From Takakia lepidozioides (lineage: Eukaryota > Plantae > Bryophyta), in assembly GCA_030704615.1 (NCBI GenBank), contig CM060731.1, positions 92,442,001 through 92,506,000 on the forward strand: a stretch of 64,000 nucleotides of DNA, in the 5' to 3' direction. Positions within the stretch are counted from its first letter, which is position 1, and each line of letters starts with the position of its first letter. A program made the position numbers and the translations under genes. This document shows, one piece after another, positions 12,994 through 62,294 of this stretch. The notes under the pieces were generated by a model that saw only the letters and a program-made list of their open reading frames with translations, searched no databases and was not told where the DNA came from.

Positions 12994-15457
12994 AAGTGTG
13001 GCAGTATTGTTGATGCACGCCAAGTGTTTGACAAAATGTATGAAAGGGATATGTTTACATGGAATATAATGATTTTTCGTTATGCCAAGTATGGGTGTGG
13101 TGGGGAGGCTCTCAACATCTATGCCCGTATGCAACAAAAAGCGGTGCAGCCTGACAGGATCACATTCATTTCTTTTCTCAATGTATGTGCCATCAAAGAG
13201 CCCTCAAAAAGGGAAAACAAGTCCATTCTGACATTAGGAAGTTGAAATTGCTCCAGATGTTATCCTGGAGACTGCCCTCCTTGACATGTATGCCAAATGT
13301 GGGAGCATGAAGGATGCACGTCAAGTGTTCAATAAAATGCCAAAACGAAATGTGGTCTCATGGAACGCAATGATGACGGGATGTGCTCAACATGGCTGTG
13401 GTAGGGAGGCCTTTGAGATGTATGAGCAAATGCAACAGGAAGGAACGGTGCCCGACATGGTCACATTCATTTGCATTCTAAATGCGTGTGCCAGGCTTGG
13501 GGTACTGGAAAAGTGTAGAGAGGTCCATGCTGACATCATCAAAGCGGGTATCCCATCATATACTAATTTGGAAACTGCACTCGTCAACATGTATGCGAAA
13601 TGCAGGAGCATGAAGAATGCACATCAAGTGTTCGACAATATGGCTAAAAGAGATGTGATCTCCTGGAATGCCCTGACTACAGGATATGCTCAGCATGGGT
13701 GTGGCAGGGAGGCTTTCAAGATCTGCAAATGCAACAGGAAGGTGTGCTGCCCAACAGGGTGGCATTCATTTGCGTTCTCAATGCATGTGCCAGCACAGGA
13801 GCTCTTGAAAAGGGTAACAGCTCCACGCTGACATCATCAAGGTGGGATTTGCCTCGTATATAAATTTGGAGAATACCCTCATCGACATGTATTCCAAATG
13901 CAGGAGCATGAAGGATGCTCAGCAATTGTTTGAAAATATGGCTAAACAAAATGTTGTGTCCTGGAACTCCCATGATCACAGGGTATGTTGAGCATGGGTG
14001 GGGCGGGAAGGCTTTTGAGATGTATGAGCAAATGCAACGGGAAGGTGTGACACCCGACAGGGTCACATTTATTTCCGTTCTCAATGGTTGTGCTAGCTTA
14101 GGAGTCTTGGAAAAGGGCAGAGAGGTCCATGCTGATATCAGGAAAGCTGGATGTGAACCATGTTTAAATTTGGAGAATACTGCCAAATGTGGGAGCATAA
14201 AGGATGCGCATCAAATCTTTGACAATATGCTTCAACGAGACATAGTCTCATGGAACACCACGATTGCAGGCAATGCTCAGCATGGGTGCAGTAGGGAGGC
14301 TTTCCAGATCTATGAGCAAATGCAACGAGAAGGAGTGACACCCGGGGTCACATTTATTTGTGTTCTCAATGCATGTGCCACCCTAGGAGCCCTGGGAAAG
14401 GGCGAAGTGGTTCATGCTGGCATTGTTAAAGCTGGAATGATGTCATATGTGGGTTTGAGAATACCCTTGTCAATCTGTATGCCAAATGTGGGAGCACTGA
14501 AGATGCACGTCGTGTGTTTAGTAATATGAGGGCCTCGCTACCACACCCATGCTGAGCATAACCTGCAATCATGGCATTCCATGAAACCACATCTCGTTCA
14601 GCAACTATTTGAAGAAATGCAAGAGGATGGCTTGAAGCCGGACAATATCACGTTTATCTCTCTTCTTTCTGCATGCAGCCATGTGGGCCTTGTGGATGAA
14701 GGGTGTCACTACTTTGACTCCTTGAGTCAAGATCATGGCATCACACCTCCAGCTGAGCATTTTGGCTGCATGGTTGACCTTCTTGGCCGTGGAGGGCGAT
14801 TGTATGAGGCAGAGAACCTCATTAAGAAATGCCAAGCAAACCAGCTTCGATAGTGTGGGGGACCTTGCTTGGTGCCTCCAGGATCCATGGCAATGTGGAG
14901 GTAGAGAGCGCATGGCAATAAGCGTTTTTGAAAGTGATCCACAGGATGCTGCAACTTATGTTCTGCTTTCGAACATCCATGCTGCGGCGGGCATGTGGGA
15001 TGAGAGAGCAAAGGTGAGAATAATGATGGAGGAGAGAGGTGCCATAAAGGAGCCAGGGCGCAGCTGCATTGAGGTCAACAACCTGGTGCATTCTTTTCTT
15101 GGAGGAGATACATTGCATCCTTGTATTGAGAAGATCCACGCAAAGTTGCAGAAATTGTCTCTGTTGATGACCAACGCTGGATACCTTCCTGACACATGCT
15201 TTGTATTGCGTGACTTGGAGGAACAAAAGATATTGTCTCTTCGTTACAACAGTGAAAAGCTGGCCATTGCTTTTGGTATTATCAGCACACCTCCTGGGAC
15301 GCTTATCCGTGTCATAGAAAACCTTCGAGTTTGTGGTGACTGCCATTCAGCGATCAGGTTCATCTCAAAGATTGTTGGGCAGGCAGTTGTTGTACGAGAT
15401 GCCAACCACTTTCACGACTTCCAAGACGGCATTTGTTCTTGTGAAGATTACTGGTGA
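12991..15457 (+). pseudogene. PLS-class PPR protein with E/E+/DYW domain (organellar C-to-U editing factor type), frameshifted
   Basis: Repeated MYAKCGS..DA.QVF..M..R.VVSWN, P..VTF..LNAC and G..VHA motifs, PG box KEPGRSCIEV, NLRVCGDCH, C-terminal CSCEDYW. Split over at least six ORFs; the deaminase HSE motif reads NSE. Confidence 0.92.
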
Positions 15458-32063: not shown

Positions 32064-32766
32064 GCGACGCTCTTGCGATTCCCAGCAGTCGCAACAGAAC
32101 CACGCCAATGTGGAGCTAGCTACGCCGCCCAGGGGCTGCGACGTTGTTGCGACTCCAAGGAGTCGCATAAGAACGTGCCCTCCCATGGAGCTAGCGATGG
32201 CCCCCGGGGGCTGCGACGTCCGTGCGATTCCCGGGCGTTGCTAGAGAACCTCCCTACCCATGGGGGGTCTAGCGACGCCCCCAAATGGCAGCGACGTCAT
32301 GGCGATTCCCGGGCGTCGCCAGTCCCCTAGGTAGAATAGACCCCATATGCGATGTCCAGGCATCGCAGAGCGGGGGCTTTAATGTCCCAGGCTGCGACGT
32401 GCCGTCGGCGCGTGGTTTTTTTTGGGGATGGGCGACGTCCTTGTGACTGCCCCATGACGCAGAGGGAGGGATGGACCCCCCTCCTTGCCCTTTGTTGCGA
32501 CTCCCGGGAGTCGCCATATTGCGACGCCTCGGAGGGGCGGCGTCATTCCGCTGTCGCTGGTCGTGGCCAGGGGGACCCGAGGGATTATCGATTCCCCTAG
32601 GTCGCTAATCTGCGACGTTCCGGGAGGTCGGACCGACGTGGCGGCGACCTCCCGACGTCGCAATTTGTCCCCGGCGCGCCCCGGGCGCTGTAGTGTATTT
32701 CCATCGCTAGGCGTGGTGTTTGAGGTCGATGAGGCATCGCTAACCCCCCCCCCAAATGTAGTAGTG
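32064..32766. mobile_element. Displaced CACTA terminus, partner of the TIR at 46412
   Basis: Ends ...CTAACCCCCCCCCAAATGTAGTAGTG followed by AAT; near-perfect inverse of CACTACTACATTTAGGGGGGGTTAG at 46412, which is preceded by AAT. Confidence 0.8.
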
Positions 32767-39160: not shown

Positions 39161-39162
39161 CT

Positions 39163-39174
39163 TGGTATCAGAGC
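39163..39174 (+). promoter_or_regulatory. Primer-binding site for initiator tRNA-Met
   Basis: TGGTATCAGAGC, 2 nt after the LTR. Confidence 0.92.
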
Positions 39175-39215
39175 TTAGAGTTCAGTATGCGATCGTCCTT
39201 GGGATTAGTCTCATC

Positions 39216-42172
39216 ATGGGGTCGGGCAAGCCAAAGCGAAAGCGGAACGGCCCAAAAGATGATAATCCTGGTGAGCCCGATGGGGGCAACGTGTCACCGA
39301 GGCGGCCGTTTGAGGAAGCGATGCATGTTTCCGAAAACGAGACCGCTCAAGAGCGGGAGGAATCTGAGGAGTCGGAGCCTGAGGAATCCCTGAGAGCTCC
39401 GACCGACCAACAGATGTCTCCCATGCCGACAGCCTTTTGGGAAGGGTTGTTGGCGCAATTTGGCGAGACGTTGAAATACGTGTTGAAGGCGGCTAATGTC
39501 ACTTCCACTAAGGCTAAGTTTAAGGTGAAGCCTAAGGAACCCGGCACCTTCGAGGGCGTCCAAAATCGGAAGGCACTCAACACCTGGCTCTTGGAGCTAG
39601 AGCAGTACTTCCGGGCGGCCAAGTTGAGTGACGAGGATCGGGTGGAAGTGGCTCCCACCTATTTGAGGGGCTATGCTCAACAATGGTGGCAGAAACGCCT
39701 TCACGACCGAGGTCCAAGCCCGGAAACCTTGAACTGGAGTGGGTTCAAGGAATTGATGAAGAGGCAGTTTGTGCCCCTCAACGTGTCCTGGCTCGCCCGG
39801 GACAAGATGAGGAATTTGAAGCAAACAGATGACATTCGGGGATATGTCCAGGCTTTCAATGTGCTGTTGCTCGAAGTCGCGGACATGGCAGAACCAAAAA
39901 TGGTCTTCAACTTTGTGGCGGGATTGGCCCCATGGGCCAGGCGGAAGTTGGAGGAGAAGCCACCTAAGACTTTGAACGAGGCGATTGAGAGGGCTGAATC
40001 TTTCTCGGATGTTCCTAAGGGTGAAAGACAAGGCCGTACGGAGCTGAACCACAAGAAGACCCGGCGGGAAGGTGACTCCTTCCGACCGGAAAAGAAGTGG
40101 GATATAGGCCACGCGGCAACAATGGCACGTGGAAATCAAAGGGAGGGCCTTCACAAGTCAAGGCGGCACCCGGTGCTTCGAAAGGAAAAGCGGGTGGGTG
40201 GAGCGGCCTATGGCGGACAGAAGGCGACCTTTGATGGAGTGTGTTTCAATTGCGGGGAGCCCGGGCACGTGGCCAAGAAGTGCACGAAGCCCCGACAATT
40301 GAACATGACTCGGGCGACCACAGAGCTGTCGGAAGATACCATCAGTCGCTTGGTGGAAGCGGTGATCGCCAGGACTTGCAAGGTAGGCAAATTTTCTTGT
40401 GAGTTGTATCAGGAAACTGGCGCCTTACGTAAAGGGAGTCAGTTATTGTTCGTGGATGGGATAATATCCGGAACTAACGTGTCATTGTTGGTGGACACAG
40501 GAGCGTCGCACTCCTTCATGACACCGGCAACGGCACAAAAGCTGGGACTCCCGACAAGTGACGTGGGGGCCTCTATTGAGGTGCGTTTTGCCAAAGGAGA
40601 ATCGCAATTGGCGACAAGGTTGGCGTTTTTGATGTTCCTCTTCAACTGGGAGTTGGGAGGGACGTGAGAACTTCACCATCTGCGAGATTGATGGAGTCGA
40701 TCTCATTTTGGGGATGACCTTTTTGAGCAAATCCGGAGCGGTCATAGATGGCCGCAAGAGAGTAGTCACGTTGCCATGTGGGAATGGTGGCGAGGTCTTA
40801 CAAGTGTCGGAAACGCCCAAACCCGTGGGAGGGCGAATAAACCTTCTGTCAGTAAGGGAGTGGGCCGTGGAGGAGGCACACGAGCCCCAGTTTTTGCTTT
40901 ACATTAGAGAAGTGAAGAGAGAAGGCGATGGGGAGCCGAGCCCAGATTGGATCAAGGGGATTTTGGAGAAATACCAGGATATGATGTCGGAGGATTTACC
41001 AAGCGGCTTGCCACCGCGAAGAGGAGTTGACCACAAGATTGAGGTGATACCGGGATCGGAACCGCCTGCCAAGGTGCCCTACCGGTTGAGCCACAAAGAG
41101 TTGGTCGAGCTGAAGACTCAGCTCAAAGATCTAATGTCAAAGGGGTACATCCGGCCGAGTAAGTCACCTTACGGAGCCCCGGTGCTATTCGCAGACAAGA
41201 AGGATGGGACGCTGCGGATGTGTGTCGATTACAGGGCTTTGAATAAGGTGACTATCAAAAACCGGTACCCTTTGCCAAGGATCGACGACCTTTTCGATCG
41301 GTTGGCAGGAGCGAAGTATTTCAGCCGGATCGATCTGCGCTCCGGCTATCATCAAATTCGAGTGGCGGAAGGAGATGAGGAGAAGACCGCGTGCAGGACA
41401 AGGTATGGTTCATATGAGTTCTTGGTGATGCCTTTTGGACTCACCAACGCTCCCGCGACCTTTAGCACGCTGATGAACAGTCTTTTCCAGGAGTGGTTGG
41501 ATGACTTTGTGATCGTGTACATCGACGACATCTTGGTGTATTCGAAAACAAAGGAGGAGCACCTAGAGCACCTCAAAAGGGTGTTCCAGAAATTGTGGGA
41601 AGGGAAGCTGTATGCCAAAGCTTCAAAGTGCGAATTCGGGATCACAAAAGTGGAGTTCCTGGGGCATGTGATTACACAGGATGGGATCAGAATGGATGAC
41701 AGGAAGGTGAGGGCAATCTTGGACTGGGAGCCTCCGATTTCGGTCCCGGGAGTGCGATCCTTCCTAGGACTCGCCTCCTATTACCAGAAGTATGTGAGAA
41801 ATTTTGCCAAGATCGCGGGGCCGCTGTCAGACCTTCTGTGTAAATCCAAAGTCTGGGCATGGAACACCTTTTGTGGCCAAGCTTTTGCTGAATTGAAGCA
41901 GCAGATGGCGGAAGCTCCAGTCTTGAAAATCCCGGAGTTCGATCGTCCGTTTGAGATTCATACAGATGCGTCGGACTTCGCGATTGGGGGTGTACTAATG
42001 CAAGATGGACGTCCAGTGGCTTACGAAAGTAAGAAACTGAATGAAGTGGAGCGACGATGGCCGACGCACGAGAAGGAGATGAAGGCGGTGGTGTACTGTC
42101 TTGAGCTTTGGCGCCACTATGTTGGTTCCAACCCAGTGAAGGTGTTCACGGACAATGTCACGGTGAAGTATT
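39216..42172 (+). pseudogene. Chromovirus (possibly Galadriel-like) gag-protease-RT-RNase H, cut inside RNase H
   Basis: Gag with CFNCGEPGHVAKKC knuckle, protease [41 protein letters not shown], RNase [22 protein letters not shown]. Frameshift near 40630-40670. Confidence 0.95.
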
Positions 42173-42184
42173 CCTCCTTCCACC

Positions 42185-42673
42185 TCATTGCGGCCTCCTT
42201 TGAAGCCTCCCTCTTCTCCCAAGGTGAGGAGGAACCCACCCCCTTCTGAGCCCCCCCCTTATAAGCCCTCTTGGTTGCAGAAGAAGGGAAAAGGCATTGG
42301 CGGTGGGGCTAAGATCAAGTTGCCCATATCTGGCGGCAGATCTGAGAATGCGCTTCCCCGCGTAAAAGTCAGGGCCCTCCATCAGCCCGTGGGGTGGCGT
42401 CCCAGCCTGAACATTGGGTGCACCACCCTCAAGTGGAGGCTCATCCCCAGCCTCATTCTTCGAGGGCGTGGAGGCCTCGACGGCCTTACGGCTTGGTCCT
42501 CTCACATAGCCGCCTATAGGGCTGGTGAGTTTGGACCAAGTGGACCGTGTCACACGGCCGTCAATGACGGGAGCGTTGTCAGGCTTCCCTACCTTAGCGG
42601 CAGGCGATTTCTGCTCCTTCAGCGGCGTCTTCTCCTTGTCCTTCGGCGGCCCCTTCTCCTTGTCCTTTGCCAT
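42185..42673 (-). pseudogene. Basic/Pro-rich ORF start, probably TE-derived, truncated at the 42172 breakpoint
   Basis: MAKDKEKGPPKDKEK...; no recognisable domain. Confidence 0.3.
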
Positions 42674-42839
42674 ACTACTAGCTTATCCCTGCGCCCACAA
42701 CACTACTACCGTGTGATTTCACATGCCAAAAACAAACAAGGCCTGACCCTCCCCTTCCCCTCTCTCCTCTCCCTCTATCTTTATGTCCTTCTCCATCTCC
42801 CCCTTTCTCTCTCTGCTGATAAGCAAAAAATGAAAAGAG

Positions 42840-43560
42840 GGCGCGGGGGGGGGGGGGGGCTGAGAGCATCAGCACTTGCTGCTGCTGTCAGCCCCCCACC
42901 ATTCCAAGAAGCAAAAAAAAAAAGGGTGGGGGAACCTGAGAGCAGTAGCAGCAAGTACTTGCTGCTGCAGCTCTCAACGCCCCCCACCATTGCCAAAACC
43001 AACAAATGAAAGGTCGGGGGGGACTAAGACCAGCATCAGCAAGCTGCTCTCAGCACCCCCCACCATTCCAAAAACAAAAAACGAAAAGGTGGGGGGGGGG
43101 GGGAAGTGACTGAGCAGCAGCAGCTGCTGAGTCACTCCCCCCCCAACCTTCTTTTTTATTTTTCTTCCCTCATCTCTCCCACTCTCTCCCTCTCTCCCTC
43201 TCTCTCCCTCTGTCCTATGTCCCTCTGTCTCCCTCTGTCCCATCAGGATGTGGAGAGAGAGGGATTGTTGAGGGGGGGGGGGGAACGGTGGGGGGGTGGG
43301 GAAGTGACTGGAGCAGCTGCCCCCCCCACCTTTTTTTTTTCCCCCCCCCCCCTCAACAGTCCCTCTCTCTCTCTCTTGTCCCTTATCTCTCCATCTCTCT
43401 CCCTCTGTTCCATCACGATGTGGAGAGAGAGGGAGAGAGGGAGAGAGAGGGAGTGATGAGGGGAAAAATAAATAAAAATTGGGGGGGAGTGAGCAGCTGT
43501 TTTTTTTTTTTTTTTTCCCCTCCTCTCTCCCTCTCTCTCCCTCTCTACTGGGAATTGGCA
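42840..43560. repeat. GTGACTGAGCAGC..GCTGCTCAGTCAC-type palindromes among G/C runs and (CT)/(GA) tracts
   Basis: About 6 related units; a related inverted block lies at 55560-56050. Confidence 0.75.
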
Positions 43561-43599: not shown

Positions 43600-44110
43600 A
43601 TCAGGCTTTTTCATCCATACCGGATGAGCCACCAGGATGGACACTGAATTACCTCTCGGATGGTTCTTTTGGCCTTTTCATTCCTCCTTTATTGACTCTC
43701 ATCCATACCGGATGAGTCACCATGGAAGAAAAGAATTACCTCTATGGAGGTTGCCAACAGCATCATGTTTTTCCATCCGTACCGGATGAAAACGGTGATA
43801 ATTTTTCATTCCTCTTTTATTGACTCTTTTTATCCATACCGGATGGTCTGGTGAGGAATGATAGAATTACCTAGATGGAGGTAATGCGCTGCCACGGATG
43901 ATATTCCCTACTTTTTCATCCTGACATAAGTGATCTGTCTATGGATGATGTGATTATGGCCTGGAATTGATCTTTACTACCCCTAATTATGATTAATTAC
44001 AGTGGAAACCCTAACCCTTACCCCAAAACCTATTTTAAACCTTGTTGCCGATGAAATCCGTCAGGGTATACGGATTCATCCTATTGTTTTTCATCCACGG
44101 ATGAATAATC
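43600..44110. repeat. CATCC-n-GGATG palindromic repeat cluster
   Basis: catcc(a/g)taccggatg and variants at about 43612, 43699, 43774, 43811 and 44092. Confidence 0.7.
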
Positions 44111-44736
44111 GGGGGACAACCCTATGTCGTCTCTCCCGCTGTCAGAAGCACGCGATGTGCTTCTGAGCTCGAGAGGAGAGTGTTATGGCGGACGTGCTTC
44201 GGTGGATGCCCCGTTTGTGGTGTCGTACCCATGCTGGACGAGCGCCTGGGGGGGCGCGAAGGCGGCGCCTTGTTTCTCTTGCAGCAGGAAACACCGCTTT
44301 GAATGCAGTGGCATCTTCCCTCCTCTGGCTTTTTCTGTGCTTAGCAAGGATACTTATGATGGGAAGTTCTCTCCCTTCTTTCTAGTGCCTTGCGATTGTA
44401 GATAACGGAGTGCGGGTGCTGCAGGCAGGAGCCCTACGAGGGGTCAAGATATATTTTCTGAGCATTTGCCATACCACAGACGGAATGGTGACATGATGTC
44501 AAACAAACGAACGAGTAGCAGAACATTCCGGTCTAGGTGTCATGATGTTTTCATGCTTCCGCTACGGCTCATGTAGCATCGAAACTGGACTGACGGGTTG
44601 TTTGATCAAGAGGGAACAGATAGATTTACCCCGGGTGGTGAAACAAGGCCCCATTTTTGGTATCAGAGTTGCTGATTGCGGCCATGTCCAGTTCAAGCTG
44701 GCGCAAGAGAGAGCTGGCAATTTGGTAGCACAATGG

Positions 44737-45012
44737 ATGCACAGTTCTAACTATACAACTCAAGGGCCAGACATAGGTGACTTGGTGTTACATATAGAAA
44801 GCTTTGGTCGCATCTCACTTGCAGGTTTGAATCCGCTGTCTTTCTACTGTTTGCCAGGAGATATAGCGATTTGTATTGTGCACACTGGTGGAGGAACTTA
44901 TGCTAAGGCGTGGATCCTATGCCATGAAAAAAACACATGGGCAGATGCGGGACATGATGCTATAAACCACACCAGTCATGTCCGATCAGTCCATTTCGGA
45001 CGACGAATCTGA
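44737..45012 (+). CDS. Small ORF A (91 aa), unknown PxhGD..D-x6-HxG-x7-W domain
   Basis: In-frame ATG 68 nt after the PBS; PDIGDLVLH..PGDIAICIVHTGGGTYAKAW. Confidence 0.6.
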   Translation: MHSSNYTTQGPDIGDLVLHIESFGRISLAGLNPLSFYCLPGDIAICIVHTGGGTYAKAWILCHEKNTWADAGHDAINHTSHVRSVHFGRRI

Positions 45013-45331
45013 ACTTAGGAATCAGCCAGTAGAACACACACGAGATGATGTAGATCCCGAGCTAGCAGCACTGCACAGACTTCCCAAACTAGGGGATATC
45101 TTTGTGGATCTGAGGCCAACGGGCAATACTAGCTATAGTTTATGGACAACGAGACAAGTAGTATAGTTCAAAGAAGGTGATGTGCTCATCCGCTTGGAGC
45201 ACCAAGGATATAAGTCTAGGATGCTTGTGTGGGAAATGATAGACACCATCGGCAGAGGTAGAGAGTGGTTGGTTACCAAACGTGAGATCTTGTCATACAA
45301 GAATCTACTAAGAGGAGTCGTCAGGCACTGA
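44978..45331 (+). pseudogene. Small ORF B (117 codons, one internal TAG at 45164-45166), paralogue of A
   Basis: PKLGDIFVD..*FKEGDVLIRLEHQGYKSRMLVW. Confidence 0.6.
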
Positions 45332-45346
45332 TAACACTAGTGAAAC

Positions 45347-45673
45347 ATGCCAGGTCTGGATCAGACATCAGTGACTGATCAACCAGAGGTAGGAGATGTT
45401 TTGATTTCATATAGTTTAGATCCGTCGCCAAATACTAACCCAAGACCAGTGTTTTACCATCAATTGTCAAGAGCGCCTAATGAAGACCTCTGTGTACGAG
45501 TGATACATGCTGGAAACCGGGTAACAGTAGTATTATGGGTCAGAGCGGCATATGCTTGGGTAATGGTTTCCGTCATGTCAATAAGAGTAGCAGTAAGCGG
45601 ACGGGATGAAGTGCTTCAGAACGGAGTATGGAGTACAAGTACTAGAAATCTAGGACATGGAAGAGTAAAATAG
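45347..45673 (+). CDS. Small ORF C (108 aa), paralogue of A
   Basis: PEVGDVLIS..NEDLCVRVIHAGNRVTVVLW. Confidence 0.6.
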   Translation: MPGLDQTSVTDQPEVGDVLISYSLDPSPNTNPRPVFYHQLSRAPNEDLCVRVIHAGNRVTVVLWVRAAYAWVMVSVMSIRVAVSGRDEVLQNGVWSTSTRNLGHGRVK

Positions 45674-45729
45674 AATAGTGTTGTTGTCAATTTAAATTGA
45701 AAAAACCCGAAGAAAAGCGACGTAACAAA

Positions 45730-46215
45730 ATGGCTAGCCCGTCAGGGGTAGATGCACCCTATTATGGTAGGGAATCAAAGGATGTGGTTGATTGGATCGA
45801 AAAATTGCAAATGGCGGGAGATGTAAGAGATTTATCAGATGACAAGATATTCAAGGTGGCAAGGTTAAACCTCAAAGGTAAAGCTGATGATTGGTATAGG
45901 TGTCAAAACCCGAAACCAGTAGATTGGGAGAATTTACAAGTGGCCATGTTGGCAAAGTTTGGGCATGTGGATATGGCGGATTTAAAGATGAATGGACGAA
46001 GTGAAGCAGGAACCAAAACAAAGGGTTCAAGCTTACTTTGACCGACTTAATCGGTTGTTTGTCAAAGGGCACATTCCCGAGTTAGAACAACGTCCAAGGT
46101 TTATGGGGGGTCTTAGGCATGAGATAATGAAGCTGATGCTAGGAACCCGATTTTAGAGTGTTGATGAAGCAGTGGAAACCGCCATGGATGTGGAGAGAGG
46201 ATTATCCACTACAAC
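45730..46215 (+). pseudogene. Ty3/gypsy-type gag (capsid) fragment
   Basis: YYGRESKDVVDWIEKL..LNLKGKADDWY..WENLQVAMLAKF, then after a frameshift KQEPKQRVQAYFDRL..FMGGLR. Confidence 0.85.
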
Positions 46216-48208
46216 ATATCCCGGCTTTTACGTCTGCTATTTTCCAGCCGTATCAGCCTTTTATGGCTGCATGACTGCCCAGTCAGATAAACCCAGTCAA
46301 TTGTGACAAATGAGTCGTAAGCGCAATAGAGTCGTATCTGCCAGTCGTGGAGCTCACTATTGACGTGGCAATGGGGGCCTAATCATAGTCATAGATAAGA
46401 CTGCAATAAATCACTACTACATTTAGGGGGGGTTAGTGACGCCGGGACCCCGGGCGCGCCGGACGCGACGACCCTCCTGCGACTGCAGCGCCGCGCAGGC
46501 GCCCGGCCCGGAAATTGCGACGTCGGCCCGTTGCCGCCGTGCCGCTCCGGTGACGCTTTGCCTGCTTGCGATTCCGCCATAGTCGCTGCTGGTGGGGATG
46601 ACCCGCCAGCGAGCTGGGGGTCGCGACGCCCAGGCGTCGCACTTACCCTCTGCGACGCTCCCGCAAGGCTGCGACTGCCGGGAATCGCAACAACACCCCC
46701 CACACTTAGGCGCGTGGGGAGGGCCGAGTCAGGTCGCGCTGGGTTTTGCGACGTCCAGACGTCGCCAAAATGCCACAATGGTGAGGTTGCGATTCCCCGC
46801 AGTCGCATGCCTGCTGGGACGACGCTCCTGCAGGGCCGCGACGTTGGGGAGTTGCAAGGATGCCATTTCCCCTTGGCCGCCACGTGGCAAGGGCACGCCA
46901 CCTCGTGGGGGTTGCGACTGCTAGAAGTCGTCCGTCAGCGGTAATGCGATGGGCCTGCGACGTCCGGGAGTCGCAGAGAGGCCCTATTTAGTGTCTTTTT
47001 GCAAAGGTCATGGCAATTGATCCCCTTCTTCCAATCTTTATAGTGCTCCTTCTCTCTTGCTGTATAACACGGCCAGAGTTCTTTCTACCACCATTGGTGC
47101 CGATCCCAGCAAACTTGACGGCCGCCGCCACATCCTCCTCCTCATCCCCTTAGGTGGGATGATGATTTTTTTGCACATGCACATGATTTTGTTTTCATCC
47201 GTTCCCAAGCCATATGCTTAATGACAACGTTTGCAATGCGTGTGCAAAATTTGGGAGCGAACAAAAATCATTTTGACTGAAAACCATATTTTCTTCCCTC
47301 ATTTGCACTCCCAAGTTGAGTTCTTTTCAACTTCATGCACTCTCCATAGACAGTTCCGCAATAGTGAGTGAATGAAACTCTTTGTTTTTTTTGTTTTTTT
47401 TTTTGGGTCCAAATTTTCCTATGGATGTAGTGGTCTGGGGTTTGCATTCACAAAACAAAATAGAGCTAAAACAAAAATCATTACGTAGGACAAATCCGCA
47501 ATCATAGATATTGTAAATGCAGGGGGTTGCGACCTCCAGGGGTCGCCTTGCGACGACATTGCGATGCCCCAACAGGTCTGCGACGGCGGGGAATCGCAAT
47601 ATCGCCTTTTATGTGTCCTTGCAAAGGTCACGGCAGAGGCCAAGCTGAATGGATCCATTGTTGCAAATCTTTTTAGTCCTCCTTCTGTGCTACAATATAA
47701 CAGGTCTATTTGCATGTGGGAGACCGTGATCAACCCGGGCGGCCTTATTGTTAAAGACAAAGGGCAGGAAGAGGGGGTAGGGACACTAGGAAAGGAAAAG
47801 GGAAGGGCCATGGGATTAGAGGGTTGAGGGTAGATTGCTTTGGCAATGGCTTTAGCAACATTGTTGTCTTTCACACCAATTTCGAAGATTCTTTCTGTTG
47901 CATCGAGATCATGGTAACCAAATCGATTGAAGGGTTTCCAGGGGTAAGTCTTGGTCAGCATTTGTAGAACAAGAACCATGTCTTCCAACATTCTTGCCCT
48001 CGTACAAAAACTCAACAATCCTAGAGACACTTTTTCGAGTCACAACTTCACTAGAATCATTCCTAGATCGCCACACCTGCAAAGGATTTTTTCATGGATT
48101 TTTCATTAATCAATCATAGAAATAAGCTACATGCATGTACATGTACAATCAATCGAAGGGATGGGTACAATTCTGTGCGAGAATTATTATGTAGCTTTGA
48201 TTATGTGT

Positions 48209-54296: not shown

Positions 54297-55559
54297 GACC
54301 TAGCACGAGAGAGAGGTAGAGTACCGTATTGTGTTAACCTCCGGAGGAGTTACACTCCCAACCCTTGGAAAAACTTGAAAAAAAAAACCCTACAAACGTA
54401 AAGCCATATGTCCCCACCCCACCAAAAAACAAAACCCTCAAAACAAAACTATATTGCAGCTAATCCTAAACTAACTATATTATAACTAACTGTAAACGAA
54501 ACTACGAAACTAAACCCTAAACTAAACTATGTAACCCTTAAAACCCTAAGAGCCAAAGACCCAAAACCCAAATGATCCTTGCAAAACCCCACAACCCAAA
54601 AATCCAAAAAATAAAATAAAAAATGATAGGCCTCTTCAACTCACCTCTGCGCCAGATCTGCGACTGCCATACGACGTCCCTGCGACTTCTGTGCGACGTC
54701 CTCCTGAGGCAGCGATTCCCCAACGTTGCAGCGGATCCACCTCCTGCAAAGGTGGCCGCCCTTCTCTCCCCTTCTCTCTCCCCTTCGCGAAGGCGCCTGA
54801 TCGCCGTCGAGGTTTTCCGGTGGGGTCGCCACACTGGCGCGCCGCGCTGCACCAACCGCCTCTCACTCCCCCTCTCAATCTCTCTATCTGATCTCTCTCT
54901 CCCTCACCCTCCTCCTCTCACTCTTCCTCCCTCCCCTCCCTCCATCCCTATTTTGTTTTTTTTTGCTCTCGAGCTCTCCCGGGCGCAACTACCCCCGCGC
55001 GCTGGAGCATTTTCCGGCGGCGGTGACGCAGCACTGACACGCCACGACATTCAAACCCACGCGCGCCCTCTCTCTCACTCTCCCTCTCGCCCTAATCCCT
55101 CTCCCTCACTCTCTCTCTCGCTCTCTCTCTCCCTCTTCTATCTCTTTTTGTTTTTTTTGCTGTTTGAGCGAGCTGGGAGCGCGCCCCCGTGACCTGCTAG
55201 TGGAGCGCCAACCGAACGCCAGCGCCGCGGGAGGGACCGTCCCTCCCTCTCCTTCTCTCTTTCTCATTCTCCCTTTTATCTCTCACTCTCCCTCTCGCCC
55301 TTATCTTTCTCCCTCATTCTCTCCCTCGCTCTCTCTCGCATTTTTTATTTTATTTTTTGTTGTTTGAGCGAGGGAGTGTGCCCACGCAACTTGGTGGAGG
55401 AGCGCCAGCGTGAAGGAGCTGCTGCGTGAGGCGCCCAACTGCAGGTAAGCAGCCATGCATTTCTGATCTTTATAGTGAGAGATTTCAGTGAGAGTTTGGG
55501 TTCCACAGAGTAGACAGTGGAATCCCCACGGATCTCATAGTATATAGGACAATAGAGGA

Positions 55560-56050
55560 AGTGTTCTTCAGTTTCAATTTCATGGAGAGAGAGGGAGAGA
55601 GAGAAAGAGAGGGAGAGATTTACCTATTTTTTTTGGACGTGCACAAAGGAGAAGGAGAGAGAGGGAGAACGAGGGAGAGAGAGGGAGAGGGACAGACGGG
55701 AGAGAGGGAGGGAGAGGGATAGAGGGGGCCAAGAAAATAAAAAAAGAAGTAGGGGGGGGTGACTGAGCAGCAGCAGCTCAGCCCCTCTCTGGTTTTTTTT
55801 TTTCTTTTGTGAGCGGCAAAGGGACAGGGACAGATGGAGGAGAGAGACGGAGAAATGAGGAAAAAATAAAAATAAAAAAATGGGTGGGGGGAGTGATTGA
55901 GTAGTAGCTGCTCAGTCACTCCCCCTCCCCACCTTCATTTTTAATTTTTTTTCCCTCAACACTCCCTCTTTCTCCACATCCTGATGGGACAGAGAGAGAG
56001 AAAGGGAGAGATGAGGGAAAAGAGGGAGAGACAGCGAGAGAGGGAAGATA
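55560..56050. repeat. Inverted relative of the 42840-43560 palindrome/(GA)n block
   Basis: tctccacatcctgatgggacagag (about 55971) is the reverse complement of about 43233-43256; same GAGCAGCAGC units. Confidence 0.7.
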
Positions 56051-59000
56051 TTCATGTCATGTCAAGATATGGACAAGACCCACTAGGGTCATTGTCAATT
56101 AAAGACATAAACAACCCAAAACAGGGCACCATCTAACATCTCCATTCTCGTCATAGCTTCCCATGAATTGACATCACCCAATCAGTCATGATAAAACAGG
56201 GTGGGAGGGCGGGGTTTGTTCATGTAGGGGATGCAAGCATCTTGAACACCCGAGATCCGGCCATCTTGGCCAATGAATCATGTGTTCATGTGTGGGACAA
56301 GATAAGATATTGCTGCCCCTGTGCAGGTTGCAAGGCCTCTTGGTTCAGCCTGCACACATACCTTACCAGCAGGTCATGTATTGAAGGAGCATAAAAATGC
56401 TGAGGTCATGCAAAGGGCAAGGTACCATGGTCCAGCCTGCCCTATTACCATTTCAAGACACGTTTTCACACATACATCTTGGATATGACCCACAGGTTGC
56501 AGCATCTTACCTTTTCAGCCATTAATTATGGCAGGTCATGCATCAGCCAAGGCATAAGGACCAGCTTGCAATTTGTCAGAATCACAATATGCCACCAAGC
56601 AGTCCTACTTGGGCATGATGAAATAAATTCCATATGATTTGTATTCACCCCGAGACATGTGATCACACAAGGTGTCAAGGGAATGTGAACTCAGCCTGTC
56701 AAATTGCAGGTTTAAGACTTGTACATACAAGCAGCTTGAACAGCCGAGATCCAGCCTCTTTTGCATATAAAAAACCAGATTGCAGGTCATAGGCATGATG
56801 TCATGACAAAGCCAAAACTATAGGTAGGATCCCATTGCAGCTTACCATCCTCATCCTTCAAGAGTTCCATGCTAAAGCATGCAAAGAACACCTCAATGTG
56901 ATCCAGTACTCAACAGAAATAGGCCCGAAAAGGAGCAGGTCGGTGCTTTATCAGGCTGCCACCATACCCTTCAAGGCCACCATGTCCATAGAGACCCAAA
57001 ACCGCCAATAACATACCACCTAAAACCAGATCCTCTTTGGCCAAAAGAACTTACAACCTAGCTCAACAATCCACAGGCCCTGCTGTCAAAGATCAAGAGG
57101 TAGGGTATGGTTTGTATGCAAGCCTCAGGAGACAGGCCAGTCAGGCCGAGCTGCGCTTTGACGGCAGAACGACAAAGGCCAAAAATCAGGCTGTAGCATG
57201 CCAAACCAGGAGCAGTCGGGTTGAGATCGGGGCTGCAGGCAGCAGCCACCTCACAACGCAAAACCCACAGGTCTTCTCAGCCCATATCCCAATCTGCATG
57301 CTCAAGAAGCTTCAAAGTAGGTGAGGATCCTCACCTGGTCCCATCACAAGCCCCCACAAAAACCAACAGGTTAGTGAGGATTGTGGAACCCCAGGTGAAT
57401 CACAGACCCTCACATTTGTCATCGATGTCAACTAAGAAACTCAAAAGCAAGAGAAAGAAATAAGAACATGAGAATCCCTAAACTCCAAAGGCACCTTAAG
57501 CGATTGAGGAAGAGGGTTATGCGCCATCACCACCCGCAACAAGCCGCCTCCACAAAGCACATAAGCAATGAAGCAAAGCAGAGTTTGCATGGTTCGCCAT
57601 GTGTACGGGTAGTCACTTGACTCACATTCCGTACATCCTTCATGGCAGTTATCCTTGGCTACTTTGCTTACTTGTGCGATCTATCCCTCAATACATACTA
57701 CTCAGCTTTATATCTCTACCTTTCATCTCGATCTGTCATTTACAGGGCCTGCATAGATCAGTTTTACTTGTGATCCAGCCCAGCTACCCTCATCTTGTCT
57801 CGTTCTCTCTACACTTGTTGCAGCTCAAACGTTTTCCAGTGTTACTCTCTTAATCGTTGGTTTCAACTGTACATGCTTTTCCTCGTAAATCTAGTCTATC
57901 TCCTTTGTATCACACGGCTTACTATGAAGGCCGCTTGGTATCAACATGATCTGTACACTGTACACGCATCTCACTAATCACTTCACTAAACCTACTCAGT
58001 CTAATCCACGCTTCTTCTGCTCTGTCTTCATCGCCTCTCTCTAACTTGAAAGTAAAACTTAACTTCAAAGTGAATCGTCTCTTCATCCTGGAATGATCTC
58101 TGTCTGCTACCTTGTACCCTGCAGCAGTCCTTGGAAATCGCTTCTGTCTCAAGTCCCTACTTTCTAATCACCGCCCCAACATCTACTAATCAGCTAAGCC
58201 TTCCCTGGTCGTGCCTGCTGACTAAGCACTAAGTTATGCGCTAATCCACGTCTTGATAAGATCTTACAAGCCCAAAACTTAATGACATGGTTTCGCTTAG
58301 TCATGCGCCTTCAATATCAGATCAATGGTTTGCATGCTATCAAAAACTGTTCATCCAGTGGCTTCATCCATCTTGGCATAGTGCGCTCAAGCAACGTCTC
58401 ACTTGATGAATGTATCTCCCCCATGCTGACTGTTCACACTACATCCATCCTGATCCACGAAGTGAACCAAGACCTTCATCCTTCTCTACGTTCATCCGCG
58501 TTCTTCCTTCTTTACTTACGTTCATCCCCTTCCACTGTTCATCCAGTTTGCCTCGCCTCTTTGCTTGTTATCTAGTCCTTCCCCCGCACACTCTATACTC
58601 TACTTGCGAAATCTAAGTGTGTTTCTCATCACTTGTTTTCCCCTTACAGCCCTATACCCACTCTCAGGAGGAAGATTGCAGACTACTTTCAACTTACATC
58701 TTCCCCAATTTACAATTCCCAGTTCTGTACCAATCTCTTGGGCCTCGTACATTGAAGCATACCCAGGTCTAAGCGATGGTCTATCTACTCAGATTCTGGC
58801 CCTCATCAACGTCGAACACCTATGCTTGAACCTCCCCCCTCTTTGCGATGTCTGGGTTCGAGCAGAGTGATCCTGAACCTTGGTGCACACATCAAGCAAA
58901 GATTCAACACTCTCTTCAATGGAGTTGCCCTCCTCTACGCTCTACTGGAATCCGATACGAGGAAACGGTAATCCAAGGACAAATACTCGGGGGGGGGGGG

Positions 59001-59628: not shown

Positions 59629-61776
59629 ATGTTAGTTAAACTTCATTATTGGAACATTAGAGGGATTGGTTCTGCACAAACCTCCCTCAAGAAAGCAAAA
59701 CTCAAAACCTGGCTATTACCACTCTTCCAACAAGAAACTATCATCCTTTTGCAGGAACACAAATTGGACAGTGCCAAAATTTCTGCCCTGGGGGACCAGC
59801 TCTGGCCTGCTAACCTTAGCTTCTAGAAACCAACAATCGAAGGCTCGAGGGGTGGGACAGCCATACTGCTTTCCCCATCCTTGGCTGCTTTGATTCAGAA
59901 AGAGGAGGTATGGTTCCATGGAAGGACTCATTTCTTATCCATTACAGTTCCGAATGCCGCTGGGGTCATAGGGATAGTTAACTTGTATGCACCAAACTCT
60001 ACCAGTGAACGCAAGGCCTTTTGGTCATCCCTCCACTCCAAAATGGAATCTGAAACCTCTATGGAACAATGGCTGATTATGGGGGGGCTGGGATCTGCGG
60101 CCCCAGGACTTGGGGAGGGTGAAGCAGCATCATGGCATTAAAGGATCGGGAACAATTTTTCCATGTCTGAAGTCACCAGAGCCAACCCCGCCCCATCTCA
60201 TCCAAGTTTCACATGGACCAACAACAAGTCTGGCCTCTATATCTACATGGCCAAACTAGACAGGCTCTACCTGTCTCAAGGGATCTTGCCTTGGGCCTCA
60301 ATGCTTCCTCAGGAACCCATTTACCAGGAGTTTGACCATGCCAACATATCCTGCCAATTAAACCTCCCTAATCTCCCAAAAAGAGGCAAAGGCTGGTTTA
60401 GGCTCAACACATCTCTTCTAACCTATCCAATATTCAGGCTTGCCCTTGAGCGTGCTTGGACCAGGGCTGACAATGATCTCATCTGCCCAATTGCGTGAAA
60501 TTGGCTCAAACTGTTCAAAAAGCTCAATCCCTTAGCTCTGAGATATCCATTCAGAGGTAGCTGTAGAACCCAAGCTCTCAAGAAATGCCTTGGAACTTGT
60601 CAAAGACTTATGGAATTGGGAAAGTCGGATGCACAATCCTTCCAAACATACCAGGAAGCTTGACAAAACCTGGAGTCCTATGCTACATTGCAAGAGCAAA
60701 AGTTAAAGCTGGCATTAATTGTTCTACGAAGGATGAGAAAATGTCCAGATACTACAGGCCCAAAAGGACCTCTCAGATAGTCACAGAACTGAAGGACTCC
60801 CAGGGCCACATCTCTTCGGATCCTAAGGAAATGCTTTCAGCAACTCAGTCTCACTTTGCTGCCCTCCTCAGACAGAGAACCCCTTCTCCTGATATAATTG
60901 CTGATAGGGATTAAACCTGCCTTCGAAGTCACAAAACCAAACTAGACCCCACCATGGCGGCCTCCCTGGACGGGGACTTCTCAGAAACCGAACTTTTCAA
61001 GGCTTTAGAACTGATGTCCAATCGAAAATCCCCGGGCTTTGAGGTATGCTAGTAGAGTTCTACAAAGCTGTGGTTGGTGTTATCATCCGACTTCTGTGAT
61101 ATGGCAAATGAAATCAAGAAATTAAAGGGTGCCATGCCACGGCCAATGGCTCAGGGTGTTATTACTCTGCTCTTCAAGAAGGGTGACAGGAAGGAAATAT
61201 CCAACTATAGGCCGATCACACTGCTCAATGTATCCTACAAGATCATAGCAAAGGCCCTCGCCTTGCGCCTTCAGCCTCACCTCCCAACAATTATCAGACC
61301 AGGCCAAGCCGGTTTCATTAAGGGCAAATACATTTAGACAACATCCTTCTTGCACAAGAAACGCCTGTCTTTGCATAAGCATCTGGCCAGCCCATTGCAA
61401 TGCTCATTTTGGATTTTGAAAAAGCTTTCGATAAGGTTGAATGGCCAATGTTCCTGGCAACACTAAAAAAAACAGGGCTCTCATCAGATTTCTGCCAGTG
61501 GGTGAAAATCCTTCTTCTCAACGCCTCAAGCAGGGTTTCAATGAATGGATTCATCTCTAAACCATTTGACCTTCAAAGATCGGTGCGTCAGGGGTGCCCA
61601 TTGGCACCATTCCTTTTTCTAATAGTTGCGGACTCGCTAGGTTATCTCTTAGACAACAACCGAAACATAACAGGTCTCAAAATTCAAACTCAAACCAACC
61701 CGGACCTTCATATCAAAGATTCCATGTTCCCCGGATTCAAGGTTAACTGGGTGAAAACAGTAGCCATTCGGCAACA
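59629..61776 (+). pseudogene. L1-clade LINE ORF2: APE endonuclease and RT, decayed
   Basis: HYWNIRG..LLQEHK, NLYAPN, FTW..KLDRLY, NYRPITLLN..YKIIAK, LDFEKAFDKV, SVRQGCPLAPFLF; many stops. Confidence 0.92.
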
Positions 61777-62294
61777 ACAGGTGAACGCCTCATTGGCCCA
61801 TTTAACAAATTTTGATTGGTCTCATATTAATCTGGGACCTGTCAGATGGTACATTGAACATATTGGCAAAGTCTCAAAGCAAACAAAAACCATTTGGATG
61901 GGCAACCATCCAGTGGCCCATTAAACAAATCTCGTTTGATCTCATGGTTCGCTTTGAGACTTTGCCAGTATGTTCAATGTACCATCTAACATGTCCCAGA
62001 GTAATACAATATCAATCAAAATTTGTTCAATGGCTCAACGGATGGTTGCCTATCCAAATGATTTTGGTTCGCTTTGAGACTTTGTCGGTATGTTCAATGT
62101 ACCATCTAACAGGTCCCAGAGTAATAGGAGATCAATCGAAATTCGTTCAATGGCTCAACGGATGGTTGCCTATCCAAATGATTTTGGTTCGCTTTGAGAC
62201 TTTGCCAGTATGTTCAATGTACCATCTGACAGGTCCCAGAGTAATATGACATCAAACGAAATTTGTTCAATGGGCCAATGAGGCGTTCACCTGT
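61777..62294. mobile_element. Foldback/MITE-like element built from a 120-bp unit
   Basis: Termini ACAGGTGAACGCCTCATTGGCCCA / TGGGCCAATGAGGCGTTCACCTGT; three tandem 120-bp units (61946-62290) opposite one inverted unit (about 61790-61930). No clear TSD. Confidence 0.75.

What the first reader, a model, noticed from the sequence alone, without database searches (positions are those of the whole stretch)
44653..46215. LTR retroelement with three divergent paralogous small ORFs packed between PBS and gag
Seen: ..CCCCA-TTTT-TGGTATCAGAG (LTR end plus Met PBS), then ORF A (91 aa), B (117 codons, one TAG) and C (108 aa), then gag. All are on one strand, intronless, with a 35-nt overlap and 15-nt and 56-nt gaps. 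The three proteins share an exact spacing pattern despite little identity: P-x-[ILV]-G-D-hhh, 27-30 residues, then D-x6-H-x-G-x7-W (DIAICIVHTGGGTYAKAW / DVLIRLEHQGYKSRMLVW / DLCVRVIHAGNRVTVVLW). Known: some plant Ty3/gypsy lineages (Ogre/Tat) have one extra ORF before gag; I know of none with a triplet of paralogues. Inference: an old, selected, virus-like polycistronic accessory cassette (anti-silencing, particle or transfer function) that would need leaky scanning, reinitiation or splicing to reach gag.
Basis: partly seen in the sequence, partly recalled or inferred. Interest (0 to 1): 0.85.

Follow-up and report, generated by a model that had tools for sequence, protein, structure and literature searches.

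The report
Three small sister genes before gag
A broken copy of a plant jumping gene (an LTR retrotransposon) carries three small, anciently duplicated reading frames of unknown function between its replication primer site and its capsid gene, an unusual but not unprecedented kind of extra cargo.

Summary
ORF A (44737-45012), B (44978-45331, one TAG) and C (45347-45673) sit on one strand between a tRNA-Met primer site (44658) and a gag start (45730), with the stated overlap and gaps.

- **Shared motif:** D-h-x-h-x-h-x-H-x-G-x7-W. In leave-one-out scans the left-out ORF is always the best hit among about 83,000 six-frame positions of the window.
- **Unit structure:** each ORF holds two 'GD' hairpin-like units 27-30 residues apart.
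- **Age:** third codon positions are no more alike than chance and there is no DNA repeat, so the triplication is old. The frames nevertheless stay open.
- **Other copies:** contigs from DNA runs of the same organism show that 44408-46206 is a multi-copy family that includes the ORFs. B's stop is absent from all 10 contigs laid there.
- **This copy:** a decayed 1.8-kb stump, cut at 46207 by a CACTA transposon end.
- **Relatives:** none found, and structure models are unreliable.

Best reading (0.55): family-specific accessory genes, a new variant of the known extra ORFs upstream of gag. Function, expression and the route to gag translation are untested. First-reader notes of this scan list similar tandem ORFs before gag elsewhere in this genome, unchecked.

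The parts
44397..44652 (+). Probable short LTR (about 256 bp, TG..CA), with a TATA-like GATATATTTT at about 44449. The left edge is inferred.
   Evidence: Contig depth drops about 20-fold at about 44400, and contigs of the far more abundant left-hand repeat continue differently after 44399. The sequence was read. No second LTR is available to confirm it.
44658..44669 (+). Primer binding site complementary to the 3' end of tRNA-Met, 4-5 nt after the LTR end.
   Evidence: Exact match TGGTATCAGAG. The same 11-mer also follows the LTR of the neighbouring Ty3-type element at 39163.
44737..45012 (+). ORF A, 91 aa, frame 1, with two GD hairpin-like units at 44776 and 44857. The frame is open from 44542, through U5 and the PBS.
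   Evidence: Indels among copies at 44586, 44648 and 44686 lie upstream of this ATG.
44978..45331 (+). ORF B, 117 codons, frame 2, broken in this copy by TAG at 45164-45166. GD units at 45092 and 45176.
   Evidence: All 6 and 4 contigs laid over the stop's first base read another letter there, giving a sense codon.
45347..45673 (+). ORF C, 108 aa, frame 2, preceded by four in-frame stops within six codons. GD units at 45392 and 45482.
   Evidence: Three contigs in each DNA run lack one base at 45650, which ends C seven codons earlier. A divergent contig keeps only the block-2 part, 45436-45538, alignable (records 5 and 13).
45674..45729 (+). A-rich, purine-rich spacer before gag. The gag ATG has a strong context (aacaaaATGG).
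   Evidence: It is the region with the lowest depth, and a contig spanning it (45494-45777) carries 11 gaps.
45730..46206 (+). N-terminal part of gag, decayed: the frame changes around 46000-46030 and there is an in-frame TAG at 46154-46156.
   Evidence: Pfam PF03732 E 0.012. BLASTP E 5e-05 to the gag at 39162-40664. Translation of the second frame.
46207..46411 (+). Start of a high-copy CACTA-type transposon (CACTACAACAT...) that cuts the retroelement. It is itself followed by a second CACTA end at 46412.
   Evidence: Depth jump and diverse left flanks at 46207. Terminal sequences.

Best explanation
This is a truncated, dead copy of a multi-copy LTR retrotransposon family with a Ty3-type gag, a tRNA-Met primer site and a short LTR. 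Its 1.07-kb leader carries three small genes made by an old tandem triplication.

Each gene encodes about 90-117 aa with two GD beta-hairpin-like units and a conserved D-h-x-h-x-h-x-H-x-G-x7-W block. This domain has no detectable relatives.

Inferred, not shown: the active lineage kept the three frames open under selection, so they are translated accessory proteins of the element. They would be read from the full-length RNA as 5'-proximal cistrons. B and C would be reached by leaky scanning or termination-reinitiation, which the 35-nt overlap and the 15-nt gap favour. gag would be reached by reinitiation, shunting or internal entry at the A-rich spacer, or from a spliced RNA.

My best guess at their role is small beta-rich proteins that act with the element's own Gag or RNA. 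This gag has only about 16 residues before its conserved core, against about 118 in the neighbouring element.
For: - ORFs and spacing confirmed.
- Paralogy: shuffle tests and leave-one-out block-2 scans, rank 1 of about 83,000 positions each time.
- The GD-unit pattern occurs five times in the leader and only in the ORFs' own frames, against 0.27 per 1000 codons window-wide.
- Old duplication: nucleotide identity among units is 0.36, 0.51 and 0.26 by codon position, and neither blastn nor Tandem Repeats Finder sees a DNA repeat.
- Frames open beyond chance. GC falls from codon position 1 to 3 in A and C.
- Family membership: 3-16 distinct contigs at each listed site, 80-99% alike, across 44408-46206. 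One 546-nt contig spans B into C with 67 differences and a single gap.
- B's stop is absent from all 10 contigs laid there.
- The best-supported indels within the family stretch lie at 44586, 44648, 44686, 45650 and 45992. None lies in 44737-45649.
- At 45483 the other copies encode Gly, giving G-D in C as in A and B. At 44792 they encode Arg, as in B's second unit.
- A divergent contig keeps B's tail, C's block 2 and gag alignable, in the same order, while the linkers are not.
- 35 AUGs precede the gag AUG, which has a strong context.
- Short gag N-terminus.
Against: - No other copy could be fetched, so there is no dN/dS and no count of intact ORFs per copy.
- No relatives in any search.
- Protein-language-model recognition scores (1553 and 1750) are below the 2300 that 91 in 100 proteins of known families reach.
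- AlphaFold2 models have pLDDT 47 and 50, and Foldseek finds nothing.
- Pair-profile HMM tests detect only C.
- Block 1 is weak, and its hydrophobic position in B differs in other copies.
- The codon-position contrast is partly built in by aligning on the amino-acid motif.
- The laid contigs show no transcript of the ORFs.
- Extra ORFs of plant LTR elements are often fast-evolving orphans of doubtful function (PMC6317226).
Confidence: 0.55

Rival explanations
1. Relic without present function. A leader segment that once coded was triplicated long ago. The frames seen today are simply those of a recent master copy, and the leader now acts, if at all, as RNA (packaging, dimerisation, reverse-transcription signals).
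For: - Orphan status in every search.
- Low model confidence.
- The family's copies are mostly 80-99% alike, so many shared open frames could be inherited from one master.
- The window's differences from the other copies fall 5, 7 and 3 on codon positions 1, 2 and 3, as in neutral decay.
Against: - With third positions saturated, about 4.7 stops would be expected per 100 random codons. Three frames of about 100 codons staying open is very unlikely without selection.
- Motif residues are better kept in the other copies than in this dead copy.
- No Rfam family matches the region.
Confidence: 0.25
2. Translational control cassette. The ORFs are long upstream ORFs whose translation tunes how many ribosomes reach gag-pol, and the peptide sequences matter little.
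For: 35 AUGs lie before the gag AUG. The ORFs are tightly packed, with four stops before C. An A-rich spacer and a strong start context precede gag.
Against: A conserved amino-acid block in three diverged paralogues is not expected if only the act of translation matters. Upstream ORFs that regulate translation are usually far shorter (general knowledge).
Confidence: 0.12
3. Parts of one larger protein. A, B, C and perhaps gag are joined by recoding (+1 shift in the A/B overlap) or by splicing, so they form the N-terminal region of Gag rather than separate genes.
For: The A and B frames overlap by 35-47 nt, with two rare CGA codons before A's stop. This gag has an unusually short N-terminus.
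Against: - Four in-frame stops separate B from C.
- The C and gag frames do not overlap (C ends at 45673, the gag frame opens after 45696).
- In most other contigs laid there C ends even earlier.
- Each ORF has its own ATG.
Confidence: 0.05

Closest known systems
Extra ORFs upstream of gag (eORF-5'F) of plant Ty3/gypsy elements: ORF0 of rice Retrosat2, RIRE3 and RIRE8 (PMC3485330); Ogre's upstream ORF (as I recall it); survey in PMC6317226; review PMC7264820
   Same: A sense-strand coding region between PBS and gag. It is carried by many copies of a family, is an orphan or fast-evolving protein, and has no known role.
   Different: - The known cases are one ORF, and the survey only counted ORFs of at least 250 codons. 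Here there are three small paralogues of 91-117 codons.
- The known cases sit in non-chromovirus (Ogre/Tat/Athila) lineages, which according to PMC6317226 do not use tRNA-Met. This element has a tRNA-Met PBS.
- No sequence similarity was found.
Polycistronic pararetroviruses (Caulimoviridae)
   Same: As far as I recall, they have a tRNA-Met primer site, tightly packed ORFs with small overlaps and gaps on one strand, and a long AUG-rich leader that needs shunting or reinitiation.
   Different: This element has an LTR-type end next to the PBS and a Retrotrans_gag-type gag. No movement protein, capsid or transactivator similarity was found. The resemblance is in layout only.
Accessory genes of complex retroviruses and of bdelloid or nematode LTR elements (PMC5408684, PMC10309623)
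   Same: Small element-encoded proteins in addition to gag-pol.
   Different: Going only by the titles and abstracts listed, those are animal elements with ORFs of different origin. They are not tandem paralogues placed before gag.

Membership tests
LTR retrotransposon, Ty3/gypsy type (Metaviridae) | LTR ending in CA, followed within a few bases by a tRNA-complementary PBS | tested here: met
   ...CCCCA, TTTT, then TGGTATCAGAG at 44658. The left LTR edge is inferred from the depth break.
LTR retrotransposon, Ty3/gypsy type (Metaviridae) | gag of the Retrotrans_gag (PF03732) kind | tested here: inconclusive
   Pfam E 0.012, 16.3 bits, below the 24.1-bit cut-off. BLASTP E 5e-05 to a clear PF03732 gag at the homologous place.
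LTR retrotransposon, Ty3/gypsy type (Metaviridae) | pol with PR-RT-RH-INT order, a second LTR, PPT and target-site duplication | not testable with these tools
   The copy is cut at 46207 by a CACTA end, and no continuation was found in the window. Other copies could not be fetched.
Chromovirus clade | tRNA-Met PBS (used by most chromoviruses and not by non-chromovirus Ty3/gypsy lineages, per PMC6317226) | tested here: met
Chromovirus clade | Chromodomain at the integrase C-terminus, and RT phylogeny | not testable with these tools
   pol is absent from this copy.
Plant eORF-5'F (extra ORF upstream of gag) | Sense ORF between PBS and gag that is present in many copies of the family | tested here: met
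   ORFs. Multi-copy contigs span B into C, and C on to gag. The share of copies with intact frames is not known.
Plant eORF-5'F (extra ORF upstream of gag) | Sequence similarity to a described eORF group, or the survey criterion of at least 250 codons | tested here: not met
   No relative in Pfam or in the large protein libraries. The ORFs have 91-117 codons.
Caulimoviridae-like endogenous pararetrovirus | No LTR, and movement protein, capsid and polymerase genes of the caulimovirid kind | tested here: not met
   LTR-type end and Retrotrans_gag-type gag. No such domains in A, B or C.

The most novel reading that the evidence does not exclude
A plant LTR retrotransposon family, probably chromovirus-like, maintains a virus-like polycistronic cassette of three paralogous small proteins built on a previously unseen two-hairpin beta domain. 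The proteins are translated ahead of gag and needed for the element's success, for example by acting on its particle or RNA or against host silencing. gag would then be reached by non-canonical initiation. First-reader notes of this scan hint that tandem paralogous ORFs before gag recur in several families of this genome, which would make this a lineage-wide strategy.
Probability: 0.25. Interest if true: 0.75.

Novelty: new variant of a known kind. Interest (0 to 1): 0.5.

Why it matters
Extra ORFs of plant LTR retrotransposons are common, yet almost none has a known role. The largest survey read here counted only ORFs of at least 250 codons (PMC6317226), so small tandem genes like these would have been missed.

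A triplet of diverged paralogues carries its own internal evidence of selection: motif kept, synonymous sites saturated, frames open. Single orphan ORFs cannot provide that. This makes the family a good test case for two questions. Do such ORFs encode working proteins? How does a retrotransposon RNA with 35 upstream AUGs still express gag-pol?

If these ORFs are ordinary relics, little is lost. The element is one more decayed transposon in a nest of transposons.

Tried and rejected
**Searches that found nothing**
- Pfam and PHROGs scans of A, both pieces of B and C, with nothing up to E 10 and E 1.
- Profile of the three ORFs against PDB sequences.
- Word-based search of 5.8 billion proteins with C, A and gag.
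- Exhaustive phmmer of C against 1.84 billion representatives. The single hit is an animal SRCR-repeat protein that matches a 17-residue stretch of C's tail 11 times. I rejected it as a chance match multiplied by the repeats.
- ESM Atlas look-alikes for C and A: no usable hit for C, and only clusters of hypothetical proteins below the lead threshold for A.
- Metagenome and viral contig scans with C and gag.
- Exact-product look-up of C.
- Rfam and Tandem Repeats Finder on the region.

**Structure**
- AlphaFold2 of C and A with the four-row alignment gave pLDDT 47 and 50, so the fold is not known. Both models are all-beta.
- Foldseek against the PDB had its best hit at E 1.1.
- No complex prediction was run, because I claim no binding.

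**Ideas tested and dropped**
- A, B and C derive from the integrase SH3 or chromodomain, from gag, or from the neighbouring element's gag-protease: no similarity beyond shuffles.
- Recent DNA tandem repeat: rejected.
- C fused to gag through the 1-nt difference at 45650: it gives an earlier stop instead.
- The rest of the element lying beyond the CACTA insertion: not in the window.

**Other**
- Look-ups of earlier findings by sequence came back blank.

Full report
**1. What is in the sequence**

I re-read 44000-47000 and listed the ORFs.
- The text ...GGCCCCA, TTTT, TGGTATCAGAG(T) lies at 44646-44669. The 11-mer complementary to the 3' end of tRNA-Met starts at 44658.
- ORF A is 44737-45012 (91 aa). 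Its frame is already open from 44542, through U5 and the PBS.
- ORF B is 44978-45331, 117 codons with TAG at 45164-45166.
- ORF C is 45347-45673 (108 aa).
- The gag ATG is at 45730.
- A and B overlap by 35 nt, B and C are 15 nt apart, and C and gag are 56 nt apart.
- A and gag are in frame 1, B and C in frame 2.
- Between B and C, four of six codons are in-frame stops.

**2. Is it gag, and is it an LTR element?**

The first gag piece matches Pfam Retrotrans_gag only weakly: E 0.012, 16.3 bits, below the 24.1-bit cut-off. It aligns at E 5e-05 with the homologous stretch of the clear gag of a neighbouring Ty3-type element at 39162-40664.

The gag continues in another frame from about 46019 and has a TAG at 46154-46156. 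The copy is therefore decayed.

According to PMC6317226, tRNA-Met is used by most chromoviruses and all complete-tRNA copia lineages, but not by non-chromovirus Ty3/gypsy lineages. The element is therefore probably chromovirus-like. That cannot be tested here because pol is missing.

**3. Limits of this copy**

I laid Logan contigs of two DNA runs and two possibly-RNA runs of the same organism on 43600-46600.
- Depth is about 20-30 times lower in 44408-46225 than on either side.
- Contigs of the abundant left-hand repeat continue differently after 44399.
- Many contigs with unlike left flanks begin at 46207.
- The letters at 46207 read CACTACAACAT..., a CACTA-type transposon end. A second CACTA end follows at 46412.
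- The left-hand repeat (43600-44400) is full of short palindromic CCGGATG-type subrepeats, typical of DNA-transposon subterminal regions.

The retroelement here is therefore a 1.8-kb stump.
- It has a probable short LTR (about 44397-44652), with a TATA-like box at 44449.
- It then has the PBS, the leader with A, B and C, and about 160 codons of gag.
- I found no continuation in the window.

**4. Are A, B and C related?**

Pairwise local alignments against 2000 shuffles gave A-B 31/2000, A-C 9/2000 and B-C 0/2000, z about 6.6.

The signal sits mainly in block 2, D-h-x-h-x-h-x-H-x-G-x7-W. A scoring matrix made from the 21-mers of any two ORFs ranks the third ORF's block first among about 83,000 positions in all six frames of the window. 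The scores are 57-63 against 31-40 for the next hit.

Block 1 (P-x-h-G-D-h-h-h) is weaker. The left-out block ranks second for A and for C, and B's is not among the listed top hits.

Pair-profile HMMs built from MAFFT alignments gave mixed results.
- A+B finds C at E 0.0024.
- A+C finds the second piece of B only at E 4.8.
- B+C does not list A among the hits shown.

Blocks 1 and 2 resemble each other (GD, eight residues with alternating hydrophobics, G or P, then about seven residues, often ending in W). Each ORF is therefore a pair of hairpin-like units 27-30 residues apart. The pattern occurs only in the ORFs' own frames.

**5. How old, and was there selection?**

- blastn and Tandem Repeats Finder see no DNA repeat.
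- Among the six units, nucleotide identity is 0.36, 0.51 and 0.26 at codon positions 1, 2 and 3. Third positions are thus at chance level. The alignment was chosen on the amino-acid motif, which inflates positions 1 and 2.
- Stop-free runs of at least 50 codons nevertheless cover 92.6% of the leader. Only 2-5 of 5000 shuffles reach that.
- About 4.7 stops are expected per 100 random codons. Three such frames surviving saturation of silent sites points to selection for coding in the active lineage. This step is inference.

**6. Evidence from other copies**

- Three to sixteen distinct contigs cover each listed site of the ORF region, at 80-99% identity.
- A 546-nt contig runs from the start of B into C with 67 differences and one gap. 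Three contigs of about 250 nt over B have 33-39 differences and no gap.
- A contig over the tail of C and the spacer has 11 gaps.
- At the first base of B's stop, all 6 and 4 contigs read another letter, giving a sense codon. No other copy laid there carries the stop.
- The best-supported indels within the family stretch lie at 44586, 44648 and 44686 (before A's ATG), at 45650 (C's tail) and at 45992 (gag). None lies in 44737-45649. A further 34 less-supported indels were not shown.
- Three contigs in each run lack one base at 45650, which ends C seven codons earlier rather than joining it to gag.
- Where the window differs from nearly all contigs, the changes fall 5, 7 and 3 on codon positions 1, 2 and 3. 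That is expected for a dead copy.
- Two of those sites make the motif more regular in the other copies. C's second unit reads G-D there, and A's first unit has Arg as in B's second unit. In contrast, B's first motif reads P-E-P-G-D in the others.
- A divergent contig (records 5 and 13) keeps B's tail, C's block-2 region (45436-45538) and gag (45744-45885) alignable, in the same order. The stretches between them are replaced by unalignable letters of similar length.

I built no consensus and repaired no frame.

**7. Relatives, fold and function**

Nothing was found.
- Pfam, PHROGs and PDB sequences gave no match.
- The 5.8-billion-protein word search gave nothing.
- The exhaustive search of 1.84 billion representatives with C gave only a spurious SRCR-repeat hit.
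- The ESM Atlas gave nothing usable.
- Metagenome and viral contigs gave nothing.
- AlphaFold2 gives all-beta models with pLDDT 47 and 50, and Foldseek finds nothing.
- There is no similarity to the integrase SH3 or chromodomain, or to gag.

**8. How gag could be expressed**

If transcription starts about 30 nt after the TATA-like box, 35 AUGs precede the gag AUG. Plain scanning is therefore implausible.
- The gag AUG has a strong context.
- It is preceded by an A-rich, purine-rich spacer.
- The 35-nt overlap and the 15-nt gap suit leaky scanning or termination-reinitiation.
- Splicing cannot be judged, because the possibly-RNA contigs touch only 44527-44613 and 44700-44824 and then run on into unlike sequence.

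All of this is inference.

**9. Comparison with the known**

Extra ORFs upstream of gag are known in plants. Rice Retrosat2, RIRE3 and RIRE8 carry ORF0, which evolves fast and has no assigned role (PMC3485330). Ogre elements also carry an ORF upstream of gag, as I recall it. Reviews and surveys are PMC7264820 and PMC6317226.

Those are single ORFs in non-chromovirus lineages. The survey only counted ORFs of at least 250 codons and excluded ORFs that lie in tandem-repeat regions.

A triplet of small diverged paralogues next to a tRNA-Met PBS is a new variant of that kind, not a new kind.

The layout recalls caulimovirids, but the LTR-type end and the gag type do not fit them.

**10. Notes of this scan**

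First-reader notes on other windows of the same genome describe the following.
- 'Three tandem paralogous small ORFs packed operon-like between LTR and gag'.
- Two tandem paralogous genes in a chromovirus leader.
- Pairs of Cys/His ORFs between PBS and gag.
- An ORF that starts in the LTR and reads through the PBS.

I could not read those stretches, so they are leads only. They suggest the arrangement recurs in this genome.

**11. Verdict**

Function, expression and translation route are unknown. Novelty: new variant of a known kind. Interest: 0.5.

Noticed in passing
window 46207-46432: Two CACTA-type transposon ends lie 205 bp apart (CACTACAACAT... at 46207 and CACTACTACATTTAGGGGGGG at 46412). 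The second has a near-identical inverted mate at 32746-32766, on the wrong side to be its own partner. This indicates nested or separate copies of two CACTA families.
   Followed up: partly
window 43600-44400: A very high-copy repeat with about 25 times the contig depth of the retroelement. It is full of short palindromic subrepeats (CATCCATACCGGATGA-like), as in subterminal regions of DNA transposons. Its usual continuation after 44399 is found inverted at 57559-57583.
   Followed up: partly
window 39162-42249: A separate Ty3-type element (gag, zinc knuckle, protease, RT, RNase H) with the same tRNA-Met PBS at 39163. Its gag frame is open right from the PBS, with the first ATG 18 codons in. 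It has no extra ORFs and is cut at about 42.2 kb.
   Followed up: partly
window 42700-43560 and 54600-56050: Long CT/GA-rich and G-run low-complexity tracts with imperfect inverted symmetry. They give many spurious ORFs on both strands.
   Followed up: no
window 45590-45640 (ORF C tail): A 17-residue stretch (SGRDEVLQNGVWSTS-like) matches the core motif of animal SRCR domains at 72% identity. It produced the only hit in the 1.84-billion-protein search. I judged it coincidental.
   Followed up: yes
window 61074-61924: Reverse-transcriptase fragments of a different kind (Pfam RVT_1 at E 7e-09, apparently a non-LTR element) on the + strand. They are not the continuation of the element studied.
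   Followed up: no
window 13200-14550: Arrays of about 300-bp repeats that encode pentatricopeptide-like motifs, probably a PPR gene of the host plant.
   Followed up: no
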